From Bigelowiella natans CCMP2755 (taxonomy: Eukaryota > Protista > Cercozoa): a DNA stretch of 51,192 nucleotides. The DNA is taken from assembly GCA_000320545.1 (NCBI GenBank), contig ADNK01000763.1, positions 1-51,192 on the forward strand, given 5' to 3'. The position numbers and the translations under genes are program-made. Within the stretch, counting starts at the first letter, position 1. Each line of letters opens with the position of its first letter. Of this stretch, positions 26,454-35,269 are shown one piece after another. Below the pieces are notes generated by a model. It had not been told where the DNA came from and did not search any database. It worked only from the letters and a program-made list of their open reading frames with translations.

Positions 26454-27645
26454 TCATGCGAGGGTTCCGTTACTGCTATTGTTACTAGTAGTAGTACTAC
26501 TACCCCAGAGATAGGGACAAGCCAGCTTTCTCGCGACAAGAACATTATGGAAATACTTCGCAGCATGCCACGACTCATCGCTCCCCTTCTTGGCGTACAT
26601 CAGTAATAAATTCTGAATGAACCTGTCCGTGCGCAAGCAAACATAACGATGAACATATGCATGTATTTCACGTACGCATGTGTGGATGGATGGATGGAAG
26701 GATGGATTGGGAGCAAAAATTTGGTTGCTATGGCCTCCTGCCAGTAGATTAGGAATTTCATAGCACTCACGAGTTGCGTTGCTTGAGAACGTAGTCTGGT
26801 ACACCCCACATCTTTTGGTGAGGACGATTCCGCAGCCCGGTGCTAGCAAACCTCTCCTTGAGAGATTCTACGCATAGCATTACAAACATATTTTGTCCTT
26901 AATATCAAATTGAAAGCACTAGTACATGCTCGTCGTTGTGGTCCGCAATAAAATATCATACACTACTACTTTCAAGCTCCTTATCTCCTTCGAATCTTGC
27001 CCTCGCTAGGAGGATGCCATAAGTAGCAGCATTAGGCGCCACCCCCTCCCTCTCCATCAGGTCGAGTATGTTCAGCATATTTCTACAGGGTCCTATCCAG
27101 TACTTAAAAACAGCGTTGAAGTCAAATGTGGTAGCTTTTTTAATCAGAATGAGTTCCTTGAATAGTCTCATCGCCATGGAGCGGGTTGAGGTCCTTCCGT
27201 CCTGGAACAGGGTCCTCAGAATATCATCGCCAAGAACTGGGGGACGGCGCCGCGGGCTACCTGATGTTGTGATGGCACGGGTGAAGTGACCTTCCTTCGT
27301 ATCTTCGCCCTGTTCATGAAGAACATCGTTGTTTTGCCGAGCTGTGCTCATCCCTCGCCATATTCTATCGTATTTGAATTCGCTCGTCTTTGTTTGAGCT
27401 GTAAGTCTTGGAGAGGGTGAGTAGGACGATGTCGAGGACAAATGGTAGATGTGTGGATAGCAGTTTTGGACCCTTATCCCTTGTGCGCTCCGATCTGGTA
27501 TGTACACGGCTTCAACTTGGAGCTTCTTCGCCGGAATCCTTCTTCTCTTCCTTTCAGATTCGGTAACCACATTGTTCACAACGCAAGGGGAAGAGAATGA
27601 CACGCGATGTGTCACTCTCTTGACCAGAGCGCTTGAGGCTCTCAT
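23462..27645 (-). CDS. Pentatricopeptide-repeat (PPR)-like protein, probably organelle (mitochondrion) targeted; multi-exon
   Basis: PPR-like helix pairs: LDLMEREGVAPNAATYGILL; LMQKESQLQPEEKHYNLAL; VWRLFRQLQNAGVADKYQYNTM; LWTEMLRNNVWPDKIAYHSL; LLDHMRTLSIQPS. The N-terminus MRASSALVKRVTHRVSFSS is Arg/Ser-rich with no acidic residues. Confidence 0.75.
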
Positions 27646-28297
27646 GGGTCGTGAGCCACTTCCTCTGCAGGGGGCTGTGTACCCCTTCAGTCAGTCGTCG
27701 TGGAGGGTTGTCCTGTCCTGGTCTCTGCCCTTGCTGCTGATCAGGCAATATTTTAACCTGATAATATCTTATACATACATCCAAATATATGATAAACCAT
27801 ATCTTACGAAGAAACAAACGAATCTCTCCGCCCTTATTGTTTGATTTCACACATCCAAATAAGATAAACTGCCGTATATATTCTTGCCGAAAATATCGAC
27901 CAAAAACACGATTGCCATTGGACCGGAGGAGGGAGTTCCGAAAGGAAAATCTTCCCTCGAGGAAAGAAAACCATTCGTATTCTTTGCGCGACATCCTTAT
28001 TTTGTTGTCGCATGGATGCACTCACCAGCATTTCCCTCCGGATCACGTTGTGCCACCGCGCGGTGGTTAGATCCGAAGCAGCGCCATGAGGTGACCAAGA
28101 GGGAAAGGAGGACCTGGAGGGGGGGGGGGGGTGGGGATAACAGAGGGAAATATAAAGAAGATGAGAGAAGAATTTGAATTGTCATCGATGATCGCTGGGA
28201 AATCTTTGTTGGAACTCACCTTTTGTGATTCAAAGAGTTTTCATGAAAATTTCTCAGATTCTTTTTTGTGTGCTGTTTATACTGGTGCAGACGATGC

Positions 28298-29548
28298 ATG
28301 TCAGTAACTCTCCGCAAGCTCGCTGCGATGGGCAAATATGACAGGCGGCGGATAGGTGGTGGGACCATTAGATTTGTGCGCTACTTCTCCGACAGCAAGG
28401 AGTTTACATTAGAGGTACATGGACACAATCAGTAACAGTTCGAAGAAACCAAAGGAGCATGTTATTCGCGATCTAGGTGCCACAAATGGGAGACTCAATC
28501 ACAGAAGGGGATGTAGCAGAACTTATTAAAGGTTTTGACTTTCTGAATTCACAAAACGCATCGTTTGAGCAGGGCACTTCATCGTTGATATTTGCACATC
28601 TCAGGGATAGGCGATACTGTAGAATTGGATGAAGTTGTAGCGATAATCGAGACAGACAAGGTAGAAACAAAGAAACGAAAATATTGTATTGTAACGCTCA
28701 CGTGATGATGTATTTGAAGGTAAATGTTGACATTCGGAGCCCGGTAGCTGGCATAGTCACCTCGATGAGTGCAGCTGAAGGTGGTTTGCTGCTGATTTAT
28801 CGGCTAACAGTGGAAGTTGTGATGTTTAAAAACGCTCCCATTTTTTAGGTGATACCGTAGAAATTGGCTCACCACTCATGGTACTGGACCTCAGCGAGGG
28901 AGCGGTAAATTTAAGACTTGTCATCTGATCACAAATATGACGGAGACTTAAATTTGTAGGTCCCTCCTCCCCCCGCACAATCCAAGCCCCCCCCCACTTC
29001 AACAACATCTGACGAGAAAGAGCTTCCGAAGCCTGCCCCGGAAATTGTGTCTGAATCAAAAGGAGAGCCTTCTTTGGCTCAGGTAGTTCCCGAACAATGA
29101 TTAGATGAACGAGTATGGCGTTGTTATTATTATAAACACGACAGAGCCAGACCCAGCATCGTGTCCCTCTTATCAAATTCCGCTATGGAAAGCGAGGTAA
29201 TTACATCCTCTCCTAGTTTACTTTTCCCCACACTCTTCATTGGATAAGGCATCTCGTAAAATTTAGAGCCCGAAGATATATCACCAGTACTACCTGAGAA
29301 AAGCGTTGGGGAGACGGCCTCTTCAGATGCTATTCCGGTTTACATCTTCAGTGACCTCACATCTGCATTGTGATCTTAAATTTACTCTTTTAATTTCCAG
29401 TTCGCGGAGCTGCCTAAGATTTATCAGCGAAAACCATTGTCAGAGGTCCAATTATTTCTCAAAACATCTTTGTGATTCTGACCAAGCGAATGATAATGCG
29501 TAGGAGGCTATCGAACTTATCAATTCTGGTGGTGCGGAACCTTACTAA
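28298..29548 (+). CDS. Mitochondrial lipoyl-domain protein fused to a KGD4/MRPS36 (YMR31)-type 2-oxoglutarate dehydrogenase adaptor; 10 exons, no acyltransferase domain
   Basis: Spliced: MSVTLRKLAAMGKYDRRRIGGGTIRFVRYFSDSKEFTLE VPQMGDSITEGDVAELIKGIGDTVELDEVVAIIETDKVNVDIRSPVAGIVTSMSAAEGDTVEIGSPLMVLDL (E2o-type lipoyl domain), a Pro-rich linker, SQTQHRVPLIKFRYGKR, then FAELPKIYQRKPLSEEAIELINSGGAEPY*. TAA at 29546-29548. Confidence 0.85.
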
Positions 29549-29599
29549 AATACGTACCTAAGCTGCAGGAAATCCTTTTTAATAAAAAATGTAAAACGC

Positions 29600-30600
29600 G
29601 ACATTGCATGCTATTGTATCGCTATCTTAAGGTCTACAAGTTTCACTTAGGCATAGGAATACATGTGCATACCGATGCCAGACTTACGTACGAGGCCATA
29701 TGGCTTAATGTAGCCTGTATATGTGTACATGTTGTTGATCATATGTCTGCATGCTAGCATGGCTAGCCAGAATAAAGTGTATCTGTTTTTCGTTTCATTG
29801 TTAGTTGCGCGTCACCGATCATGCTGCGACATGCCGCTTGCATTGTGCTGCACGCGCACAACAATCAGCGCTAGACTAGTATGTACACACTAGTACTAGA
29901 GTACCGAATGCTGGCGGAAAGGTCTATTGGTTGTTTCTGCCAAGCTAGCAAGGTCACAATCCACAAAGGCTATAAGCTAGTAAGGCTAGCAGGTCAAACA
30001 ACAGTTGTTCCAGAGATGGGGTGCAACGTTGTCAATTCTGTCCACCGACACTAGCTAGGACACGTTGTCCGCAGCAAACTTGCACTTGCATGCATGCAGG
30101 CTAGCAGGACAATGTGGACCTTCATGCACCAGCAAGCTAGCCAGCGATTCCACTCATCCATTTGTCATGATTTTGCAGTGTTTATTTCAACGATGCTCTG
30201 CTAGCCTGGCTAGAGGCTTCTGCAATGTGCATGGGCAATGCTAGAATGGCGCGATGCTCTGGCGATGATATTTTTGCCATGTCATTTTGACAAAAGCTAG
30301 AAAGATCATTTTGATGTAAGACACGTGCTGTGCCCATGATTTTTGTCATGTCATTCTAGCAATTCATTCCAGCAGCAGCTAGAGCAGGCTAGCAGGTCCG
30401 CAGCAGGTGAAAATTTGGGTTGTGAATCTTGGGGCATTTTCCCTGCCACGAGCAGATAGGAATTCAAAATAACAGGCTAGCAGGGGTCAGGCATGTGGTC
30501 TGCTGCACACATGTATGTAGCAGCGCATAAGCTCACTGTCATTATCACAGCAAGACTAACATGCCGGTTGTGAAAAGAGAACATTTGATTTTGTGTTGTT
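29600..30600. repeat. GCTAGC/CATG/TGCA-rich tract between convergent gene ends
   Basis: catgctagcatg, repeated ggctagcagg, and CAAGCTAGCAAG at 29941-29952. Confidence 0.55.

Positions 30601-30650: not shown

Positions 30651-35269
<4,619 letters not shown>

What the first reader, a model, noticed from the sequence alone, without database searches (positions are those of the whole stretch)
28298..29548. Stand-alone lipoyl-domain + KGD4/MRPS36 adaptor: an OGDH subunit with a swinging arm but no E2 catalytic core
Seen: a mitochondrial-type presequence, an intact E2o-like lipoyl domain (ETDK, Lys codon at 28658-28660), a Pro-rich hinge, then HRVPLIKF and a terminal ELPKIYQRKPLSEEAIELINSGGA followed by a stop. 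No acyltransferase exons follow; the next gene is convergent MCM5. Known: these two motifs are the conserved ends of yeast Kgd4/animal MRPS36, the small adaptor that recruits E3 to 2-oxoglutarate dehydrogenase, and those proteins carry no lipoyl domain. Inference: this is a lipoylated adaptor analogous to E3BP/protein X of pyruvate dehydrogenase, adding an extra redox arm to OGDH, and possibly an ancestral-type architecture. Automated annotation would probably call it a truncated E2. I cannot check how widely this architecture has already been reported.
Basis: partly seen in the sequence, partly recalled or inferred. Interest (0 to 1): 0.8.

Follow-up and report, generated by a model that had tools for sequence, protein, structure and literature searches.

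The report
Lipoyl-domain-bearing KGD4 adaptor of OGDH
This alga makes one small mitochondrial protein that joins a lipoic-acid-carrying domain to the KGD4/MRPS36 adaptor of the 2-oxoglutarate dehydrogenase complex, and the same fusion, apparently undescribed in papers, occurs in many other eukaryotes.

Summary
A 10-exon, 226-aa gene (28298-29548, + strand) has nine GT-AG introns of 55-73 nt. Assembled RNA contigs from two studies cross all nine junctions in one molecule, so the lipoyl and KGD4-like exons are one mRNA.

The product has a basic N-terminal leader, one E2o-type lipoyl domain (Lys codon 28658-28660) and a Pro-rich linker. Then come the two KGD4/MRPS36 motifs, HRVPLIKFRYGKR and ...PLSEEAIELINSGGAEPY. 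No acyltransferase domain lies on this contig. A canonical E2o with its own lipoyl domain sits on contig C3320.

The spliced protein has no reference, so I sent it to no database tool. A search seeded with the genome's own E2o lipoyl exon recovered a family of 160-290-aa proteins with the same layout. Of 41 members, 41 match Pfam Biotin_lipoyl and 31 match Kgd4-YMR31. Named members come from diatoms, eustigmatophytes, raphidophytes, pelagophytes, chrysophytes and chytrid fungi, and are labelled "E2 component" or "lipoyl-binding domain protein". The window's exons match the family profile collinearly.

Lipoylation, E3 recruitment and ancestral status are inferred, not shown. Verdict: a new variant of a known kind.

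The parts
27991..28090 (+). 5' UTR exon, as far as the RNA contig reaches. It holds upstream ATGs at 28012 and 28016, and an ATG at 28086 that is in frame across the UTR intron.
   Evidence: RNA contig X1 pieces and the joint 28088->28289 (cut +2) in X1 and X8; ATG scan.
28091..28290 (+). 5' UTR intron (GT..AG, 200 nt).
   Evidence: Joint seen in two RNA contigs from two studies.
28298..28414 (+). Coding exon 1: a basic N-terminal leader (8 Arg/Lys and 1 acidic residue in the first 30, no hydrophobic signal-peptide core), taken as a mitochondrial presequence, plus the start of the lipoyl domain.
   Evidence: Translation; junction confirmed; targeting is inferred from composition only.
28477..28904 (+). 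Coding exons 2-5 (28477-28531, 28605-28660, 28720-28780, 28849-28904): the E2o-type lipoyl domain, with the family's near-invariant GDSITEG, ETDK and VxxG positions kept.
   Evidence: Pfam Biotin_lipoyl on the exon-3 piece (19.8 bits, E 7e-4). Family HMM hits on each exon piece in collinear order. tblastn of family members. All junctions in RNA.
28658..28660 (+). AAG codon of the predicted lipoyl-lysine in the ETDK motif.
   Evidence: T, D and K are invariant in the 41-member family alignment A2.
28960..29082 (+). Coding exon 6: Pro/Ser/Thr-rich flexible linker (41 aa).
   Evidence: Translation. The matching region of homologue P0004 is modelled as disordered, pLDDT about 53-57.
29145..29196 (+). 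Coding exon 7 with the N-terminal KGD4 motif HRVPLIKFRYGKR (29157-29195). In yeast Kgd4 the N-terminal part binds E3.
   Evidence: Family HMM 18.3-18.4 bits, E 2e-4 to 6e-4 among 2758 window pieces. It is the only hit of the KGD4-part profile in the whole 91 Mb genome. P, I, K and F are invariant in A1/A2. The same motif in LD-less P0173 aligns to Pfam Kgd4-YMR31 positions 2-41. Yeast data: PMC4214781.
29267..29337 (+). Coding exon 8: poorly conserved spacer between the two KGD4 motifs.
   Evidence: Translation; junctions in RNA.
29401..29548 (+). Coding exons 9 and 10 (29401-29445, 29504-29548) with the C-terminal KGD4 motif, reading ...ELPKIYQRKPLSE|EAIELINSGGAEPY, then TAA. In yeast Kgd4 the C-terminal part binds the E1-E2 core.
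   Evidence: Exon 10 is the second-best hit of the KGD4-part HMM in the window, at 10 bits; exon 9 scores 6.4 bits. tblastn alignments to P0060, P0086 and P0021. The joined model scores 37.4 bits against A1 (local). The same region of family members aligns to Pfam Kgd4-YMR31 positions about 84-116.
29549..29739 (+). 3' UTR. Contigs end at 29710-29787.
   Evidence: RNA contig pieces and raw-read depth.

Best explanation
The gene encodes the KGD4/MRPS36 (E3BPo) subunit of this alga's mitochondrial 2-oxoglutarate dehydrogenase complex, in a form that carries its own E2o-type lipoyl domain.

Proposed mechanism:
- The leader takes the protein into mitochondria.
- The C-terminal motif (...PLSEEAIELINSGGA) docks on the E1o-E2o core.
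- The PLIKF motif holds the E3 dimer. This replaces the peripheral-subunit-binding domain that eukaryotic E2o lacks.
- The lipoyl domain hangs on a roughly 45-residue Pro-rich tether next to that E3. It is lipoylated on the ETDK lysine and works as an additional swinging arm, as the lipoyl domain of E3BP/protein X does in pyruvate dehydrogenase.

Shown: one mRNA, the domain order, homology of both halves, a separate complete E2o in the genome, and conservation of the fusion across distant eukaryotes.

Inferred: targeting, lipoylation, the two binding roles (by homology to yeast and mammalian KGD4) and catalytic use of the arm.
For: - One transcript: contigs X1 and X8 span all nine junctions, from the 5' UTR to the 3' UTR.
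- Family: P0004 has Biotin_lipoyl at 57.6 bits and Kgd4-YMR31 at 28.8 bits, above the cut-off of 22. Of 41 aligned members, 41 match Biotin_lipoyl and 31 match Kgd4-YMR31. More than 50 proteins share a lipoyl domain, PLIKFxGKR and a C-terminal ...EIEAIESGGA.
- Window membership: the family HMM's six best hits among the window's 2758 stop-free pieces are this gene's exons, in order. The joined model scores 167 bits against A2 and 37.4 bits against the KGD4-part profile A1 (local). The best full-length match is P0078, 39% identity over 217 aa, E 2e-36.
- The KGD4-part profile retrieves LD-less proteins of about 90-115 aa with presequences and PF10937 labels.
- The genome has E2o with its own lipoyl domain and catalytic domain at C3320 and E1o-type genes. 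An E2o of a close relative (P0001) has no PF02817 E3-binding domain.
- The lipoyl T-D-K and glycine positions are invariant in the family. A model of homologue P0004 gives a lipoyl fold at pLDDT 93-97 and a C-terminal helix at 75-89.
- KGD4 roles come from PMC4214781 (N-terminal part binds E3, C-terminal part binds the E1-E2 core) and PMC9974300 (it replaces the missing PSBD).
Against: - The window's own protein could not be scanned against Pfam. Its exon pieces alone give no Kgd4-YMR31 match.
- Its nearest relatives are weak on Pfam: P0078 and P0086 give none, and P0060 scores 21.2 bits against a cut-off of 22.
- One column that is invariant Glu in the family (E223 of P0004, in the C-terminal helix) is Ala in the window protein.
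- No experiment or prediction here shows lipoylation or binding. The complex job gave no verdict.
- Raw reads of run X21 cover mainly exons 7-10 and the 3' UTR, so junctions 1-5 rest on assembled contigs only.
Confidence: 0.7

Rival explanations
1. The architecture and location are the same, but the lipoyl domain is not a catalytic arm. It acts as a second, non-catalytic contact, an anchor in an E3 or E1o lipoyl-binding site, that strengthens or regulates tethering.
For: PMC10203282 proposes that surplus, unloaded lipoyl domains may act as anchors on E1o and E3. The domain sits directly upstream of the E3-binding motif.
Against: The lipoyl-lysine triplet T-D-K is invariant in all 41 aligned members. 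That is expected if lipoylation matters. An anchor role could still need the cofactor, so this does not exclude the rival.
Confidence: 0.2
2. It is an adaptor or arm of another 2-oxoacid dehydrogenase complex (2-oxoadipate, branched-chain or pyruvate) rather than OGDH.
For: Some database labels call family members branched-chain or generic E2 components. The genome has two E1o-type loci, one of which could be a 2-oxoadipate-type E1 that shares E2o.
Against: The lipoyl domain is clearly E2o-type, not E2p- or E2b-type. KGD4 is OGDH-specific in yeast and mouse (PMC4214781). Those labels are automatic.
Confidence: 0.06
3. It is a gene-model artefact, a truncated E2o pseudogene, or a chance resemblance to KGD4.
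For: Exon-level Pfam and PDB searches of the KGD4-like pieces find nothing. A whole-genome PF10937 scan finds nothing.
Against: Spliced RNA contigs from two studies cover the complete ORF, stop codon and 3' UTR. The same three-part layout is conserved in dozens of distant eukaryotes, and these pass Pfam Kgd4-YMR31. The exons match the family profile in order.
Confidence: 0.02

Closest known systems
KGD4 / MRPS36 / Ymr31 (E3BPo), Pfam PF10937 Kgd4-YMR31
   Same: It has the two short conserved motifs in the same order: a PLI[KR]F-type N-terminal motif and a C-terminal ...E-I/M-x-x-I-x-x-GG motif at the very end. It has a presequence and no catalytic domain. The expected role is to tether E3 to the PSBD-less eukaryotic E2o core.
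   Different: The canonical proteins of yeast, Neurospora, Chaetomium and mammals are about 100-135 aa and are described without a lipoyl domain (PMC4214781, PMC9974300, PMC10203282). This protein has a complete E2o-type lipoyl domain and a Pro-rich linker in front of the KGD4 part.
E3-binding protein (E3BP / protein X, Pdx1) of pyruvate dehydrogenase
   Same: It is a non-catalytic subunit that carries a lipoyl domain on a flexible linker and recruits E3 to an E2 core. It appears to be derived from the cognate E2.
   Different: E3BP keeps a PSBD (PF02817) and an inactive acyltransferase-fold core domain that is built into the E2p core. The protein here has neither and would dock through a short C-terminal peptide motif.
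E2o, dihydrolipoyl succinyltransferase (DLST/Kgd2/SucB)
   Same: The lipoyl domain is of the E2o type, about 51% identical over 45 aa to this genome's own E2o domain and sharing ETDKV and VDIRS. Automated pipelines name family members 'E2 component'.
   Different: It has no 2-oxoacid_dh catalytic domain (PF00198), either in the transcript or anywhere on the contig. The genuine E2o is a separate gene on contig C3320.

Membership tests
Lipoyl-domain + KGD4 fusion family (alignment A2, defined here) | Collinear full-length match: lipoyl domain, linker, PLIKF motif, spacer, C-terminal ...SGGA motif. | tested here: met
   The A2 HMM's top six hits among 2758 window pieces are exons 2, 3, 4, 5, 7 and 10, at HMM positions 34-51, 52-72, 70-91, 91-110, 140-157 and 213-223. 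The joined model scores 166.6 bits over HMM positions 28-223. blastp to P0078 gives 39% identity over 217 aa, E 2e-36.
KGD4/MRPS36 (Pfam PF10937 Kgd4-YMR31) | Profile match above Pfam's gathering score (22 bits). | tested here: inconclusive
   The spliced protein has no reference, so it was not scanned. Exon pieces give no match. Family members do pass: P0004 28.8, P0085 31.3, P0229 37.9 bits, and 31 of 41 at E <= 0.01. The nearest relatives P0078 and P0086 do not, and P0060 scores 21.2 bits.
KGD4/MRPS36 | Conserved N-terminal motif (PLI[KR]F...), the E3-binding part. | tested here: met
   HRVPLIKFRYGKR lies at 29157-29195. P, I, K and F are invariant in A1. The same motif in LD-less P0173 aligns to Pfam positions 2-41.
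KGD4/MRPS36 | Conserved motif at the extreme C-terminus (...E-I/M-E-x-I-x-x-GG), the core-binding part. | tested here: met
   The protein ends PLSEEAIELINSGGAEPY. It aligns to A1 HMM positions 53-83. The equivalent region of members aligns to Pfam positions about 84-116. One deviation: Ala replaces the family's invariant Glu.
KGD4/MRPS36 | Small single-module protein (about 100-135 aa) without other domains. | tested here: not met
   The protein is 226 aa with an N-terminal lipoyl domain. This is the point of difference, so I call it a variant, not a canonical member.
KGD4/MRPS36 | Physically bridges E3 and the E1o-E2o core. | not testable with these tools
   The one complex job (E2o core trimer P0001 plus the KGD4 part of P0078) returned no verdict. 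There is no E3 sequence with a reference.
Lipoyl domain (Pfam PF00364 Biotin_lipoyl) | Profile match and the lipoyl-lysine in a (E/D)TDK turn. | tested here: met
   The exon-3 piece alone scores 19.8 bits, E 7e-4, below the 22.1 cut-off because it is only 20 of 73 positions. Four collinear exon hits to the family's lipoyl region. ETDK, GDSITEG and the glycines are kept. All 41 homologues pass.
E2o dihydrolipoyl succinyltransferase | C-terminal 2-oxoacid_dh acyltransferase domain (PF00198) with the DHRxxDG active site. | tested here: not met
   The genome's PF00198 matches lie only on contigs C3157, C3320, C1042 and C3581, none on this contig. The mRNA ends about 190-240 nt after the stop codon.
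E3BP / protein X of PDH | PSBD (PF02817) and an inactive acyltransferase-fold core domain. | tested here: not met
   No PF02817 or PF00198 match in any of the 41 members or in 10 further members. hhalign of the KGD4 part against PSBD gives probability 0.2-0.6%.

The most novel reading that the evidence does not exclude
KGD4/MRPS36 did not arise de novo. It is what remains of an early eukaryotic duplicate of E2o, so OGDH has its own E3BP. On this reading the lipoyl-bearing form, seen here in a rhizarian alga, many stramenopiles, chytrid fungi and possibly green algae and haptophytes, is the ancestral state. Animals and Dikarya later lost the lipoyl domain. A more speculative extension is that the family's GVDFxxLxGGAxFGRP stretch is a relic of the peripheral-subunit-binding domain. 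In that case the PSBD 'missing' from eukaryotic E2o was partitioned to this paralogue rather than lost.
Probability: 0.3. Interest if true: 0.75.

Novelty: new variant of a known kind. Interest (0 to 1): 0.62.

Why it matters
KGD4/MRPS36 is described as a small adaptor, with no prokaryotic relatives, that replaced the E3-binding domain missing from eukaryotic E2o. Its origin is open.

A conserved form with an E2o-type lipoyl domain gives a concrete and testable origin: a duplicate of E2o, parallel to E3BP in pyruvate dehydrogenase. It also predicts one more lipoylated mitochondrial protein in diatoms, Nannochloropsis, chytrids and this alga.

It changes how OGDH stoichiometry and lipoyl-arm counts should be modelled in those organisms. 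It also corrects a recurring annotation error, in which these proteins are named 'E2 component' or 'truncated E2'.

Tried and rejected
- Whole-genome six-frame scan with Pfam PF10937: no match, and none in the control genomes either, so it is uninformative for exons this short.
- Pfam on nine stop-free exon pieces: only Biotin_lipoyl on one piece.
- phmmer of the two KGD4-like pieces against PDB sequences: only chance hits, or nothing.
- Search of 1.84 billion representative proteins with exon 1 (41 aa): no hit, so the alga's own protein is not a representative there.
- Search of this genome for a second copy of either motif, or of the KGD4-part profile: only the window's own exon is found. 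Sensitivity is low, so a separate LD-less KGD4 gene is not excluded.
- Complex prediction, E2o core trimer (P0001:125-371 x3) with the KGD4 part of P0078: no verdict (score 0.14, mark 0.34). It is evidence neither for nor against binding.
- PSBD-relic idea. hhalign of the KGD4 part against full E2o and against PSBD alone finds the same register but is not significant (P 0.1-0.25). A small local PSBD HMM scores nine chrysophyte-type members (up to 14.2 bits) above all 835 shuffles (maximum 6.2). The family median of -1.6 is close to the controls, and those nine are close kin. Pfam shows no PF02817 in them. I keep it only as speculation.
- Paper searches for a lipoyl-bearing KGD4/MRPS36/E3BPo: nothing found. 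The supplement of PMC9974300 is not held.
- Left out: every database or structure step on the joined 226-aa protein (Pfam scan, homologue search, exact look-up, fold), because a spliced model has no reference. The joined translation was built from window.fa only inside local scripts, to check the frame and to score it against profiles made here.

Full report
**Gene model.** The region reads as a compact, intron-rich eukaryotic gene on the + strand. I placed the exon borders by frame and by GT..AG. There are ten coding exons: 28298-28414, 28477-28531, 28605-28660, 28720-28780, 28849-28904, 28960-29082, 29145-29196, 29267-29337, 29401-29445 and 29504-29548. The nine introns are 55-73 nt. The ORF is 681 nt, giving 226 aa, and ends in TAA.

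**RNA evidence.** Twenty public runs from eight studies hold about 0.27-0.38 of the stretch's 31-mers, which fits spliced RNA. I laid four runs on 27900-29900.
- A 979-nt contig (X1) and an 882-nt contig (X8), from different studies, each carry all nine predicted junctions with no mismatches.
- Both also show a tenth junction. It removes a 200-nt intron from the 5' UTR (about 28091-28290) after a 5' exon at 27991-28090.
- The contigs end at 29710-29739.
- Run X16 (labelled organism B) shows the same junctions on two contigs that break in the Pro-rich exon.

Two caveats apply. The only raw-read run (X21) is strongly 3'-biased: it covers exons 7-10 and the 3' UTR and almost nothing upstream, so junctions 1-5 rest on assembled contigs. 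No in-frame Met follows the lipoyl domain, so an LD-less product from a shorter transcript is unlikely. An in-frame ATG at 28086, split by the UTR intron, could add MRRC. Two out-of-frame upstream ATGs lie at 28012 and 28016.

**What could not be done directly.** A spliced model has no reference, so I did not send the joined protein to any search, look-up or folding tool. I searched exon by exon instead.
- Exon pieces are 14-41 aa and mostly too short. Pfam found only Biotin_lipoyl on the exon-3 piece (19.8 bits, E 7e-4).
- PF10937 found nothing in the six-frame genome scan.
- PDB sequences gave nothing for the KGD4-like pieces.
- Exon 1 found nothing among 1.84 billion representative proteins.

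The joined translation was used only inside local scripts, built from window.fa.

**Genomic context.** The genome (91.4 Mb, 3736 contigs) has four acyltransferase-type E2 loci, none on this contig. Each has a lipoyl exon upstream. C3320 is E2o by its PDB matches and C3157 is E2p. E1o-type genes are present. This protein is therefore additional to a complete E2o, not a replacement for its arm. Together with the genome size, that suggests a chlorarachniophyte such as Bigelowiella. I did not test this.

**Finding relatives.** The E2o lipoyl exon of C3320 lies in a 214-aa stop-free stretch. I used it by reference, with the scored region limited to the lipoyl part. This returned four proteins, one of them P0004 (235 aa), labelled PF10937 + PF00364. 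A fresh Pfam scan of P0004 gives Biotin_lipoyl at 57.6 bits and Kgd4-YMR31 at 28.8 bits, above the cut-off of 22.

Searching with P0004 gave 1238 hits. More than 50 proteins of 160-290 aa among the 123 then in hand have the same layout: a presequence, a lipoyl domain, a linker, [R/H]xPLIKFxGKR, a spacer, and a C-terminal ...FGRPxLSxxEIEAIESGGA.

Named members:
- Stramenopiles: Nannochloropsis/Microchloropsis salina (TFJ86780.1), Thalassiosira rotula and T. gravida, Fibrocapsa, Heterosigma, Chrysophaeum, a pelagophyte, a parmalean, and the chrysophytes Epipyxis and Pedospumella.
- Durinskia, which I recall hosts a diatom endosymbiont (from my own knowledge, not checked here).
- Chytrid fungi: Boothiomyces and Terramyces.

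A language-model look-up of the window's closest relative also points to clusters whose commonest known phyla are diatoms, Chlorophyta and Haptophyta. That is a lead only.

**Family statistics.** In a 41-member alignment (A2), all 41 match Biotin_lipoyl and 31 match Kgd4-YMR31 at E <= 0.01. The lipoyl T-D-K, the P-I-K-F of the first motif and a glycine of the terminal GG are invariant.

A profile of the KGD4 parts alone (A1) retrieves 387 proteins. Many of those listed are fragments that begin in the last lipoyl strand. Others are genuine LD-less proteins of about 90-115 aa with presequences and PF10937 labels. In one of these, P0173, the PLIKF-type motif aligns to Pfam positions 2-41. In the fusion proteins, the C-terminal motif aligns to Pfam positions about 84-116.

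**Placing the window's gene in the family.**
- tblastn of family members against the window aligns exon by exon, including HRTPLIKFTHGK to exon 7 and C-terminal pieces to exons 9 and 10.
- A local HMM of A2, run against all 2758 stop-free pieces of the window, ranks this gene's exons first to sixth, in collinear order.
- The KGD4-part HMM ranks exon 7 first (18.3 bits), exon 10 second and exon 9 fourth.
- The joined model scores 167 bits against A2 and 37.4 bits against A1. It aligns end to end with P0078 at 39% identity, E 2e-36.
- In the whole genome, the A1 profile's only hit is exon 7.

Weak points:
- The nearest relatives are borderline or negative on Pfam PF10937.
- The window protein has Ala where the family has an invariant Glu in the C-terminal helix.

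**Type and history of the lipoyl domain.** The family profile scores the genome's E2o lipoyl exons at 57.9 + 28.3 bits, against at most 21 bits for the other three E2-type genes. The window's domain is about 51% identical to the E2o domain over 45 aa.

In a lipoyl-domain tree of 77 fusion rows and 20 E2 rows, the 'fusion' label needs 3 changes, against 17.5 for shuffled labels. An AU test does not reject a single fusion clade (p = 0.19). With 79 columns and mostly bacterial E2 rows, this is compatible with one old origin but does not prove it.

**Structure and complex.** An AlphaFold2 model of homologue P0004, built with A2, shows a confident lipoyl barrel (residues 39-114, pLDDT 93-97). The linker is disordered, and a short C-terminal helix (221-228) has pLDDT 75-89. 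The single complex job gave no verdict and is not used as evidence.

**Mechanism.** By homology to yeast Kgd4, the C-terminal motif should dock on the E1o-E2o core and the PLIKF motif should hold E3. In yeast the N-terminal part binds E3 and the C-terminal part binds the Kgd1-Kgd2 core (PMC4214781). The MRPS36 model has it replacing the PSBD that eukaryotic E2o lacks (PMC9974300). The lipoyl domain, tethered next to that E3, would be lipoylated and would serve as a further swinging arm. This makes the protein a functional analogue of PDH's E3BP. Chaetomium KGD4 has already been called 'E3BPo', but it is described without a lipoyl domain (PMC10203282). The main rival reading is that the domain acts as an anchor rather than a catalytic arm.

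**Novelty.** Six paper searches found no description of a lipoyl-bearing KGD4. The literature places KGD4 in fungi and animals (PMC4214781) or in eukaryotes generally (PMC9974300). The sequences and their Pfam labels are public, so the protein itself is not new. What appears to be new is the recognition that this is a conserved, widespread KGD4 variant. That makes the idea of KGD4 as an E2o-derived 'E3BP of OGDH' testable.

**A speculative extra.** The family's GVDFxxLxGGAxFGRP stretch falls in the same register as the PSBD loop in two hhalign runs, but without significance. A local PSBD HMM exceeds every shuffle only in one chrysophyte subgroup.

Noticed in passing
window 27991-28297: The mRNA has a 200-nt 5' UTR intron (about 28091-28290). 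Two out-of-frame upstream ATGs lie at 28012 and 28016. An in-frame ATG at 28086 is split from the ORF by the intron and would add MRRC. A run of 12 G lies inside the intron, near 28121.
   Followed up: partly
window 29039-29775 (run X21): The raw reads of the only RNA run kept as reads are strongly 3'-biased, with first mates on the + strand. They cover exons 7-10 and the 3' UTR but almost nothing of exons 1-6. This looks like a property of a 3'-end-type library rather than a second transcript, but I did not resolve it.
   Followed up: no
window about 30900-33400, minus strand: The convergent neighbour is an MCM helicase gene whose best PDB matches are MCM5 (76 bits, against 59 for MCM2). One of its introns holds TA/CA microsatellites, at about 32050-32330.
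   Followed up: partly
window 26956-27645, minus strand: A 229-aa ATG-started open frame lies divergent from this gene, about 350 nt from the mRNA's 5' end. It is probably the first exon of the upstream neighbour, so the two genes may share a short bidirectional promoter region.
   Followed up: no
alignment A1 (KGD4 parts) vs A3/A4 (E2o, PSBD): The family's GVDFxxLxGGAxFGRP stretch aligns in a fixed register with the PSBD loop GIDxxxVxGTGxxGRV. The match is not significant by hhalign. Nine chrysophyte-type members score 6.3-14.2 bits on a small PSBD HMM, above all 835 shuffled controls.
   Followed up: partly
proteins P0145, P0150, P0173, P0176, P0186, P0206, P0213: LD-less KGD4-type proteins of about 90-115 aa, with their own presequences, share the fusion family's exact motif style. 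The lipoyl domain has therefore been gained or lost more than once, or some lineages keep both forms.
   Followed up: partly
G000:C3320:19700-21815 (L004, L012): The canonical E2o gene has its lipoyl domain split over at least two exons. A close relative's E2o (P0001) carries no PF02817 E3-binding domain, like other eukaryotic E2o proteins.
   Followed up: partly
protein P0025 (334 aa): An E2o-type protein from an unnamed source carries two tandem lipoyl domains. Both are 52-54% identical to the window's domain.
   Followed up: no
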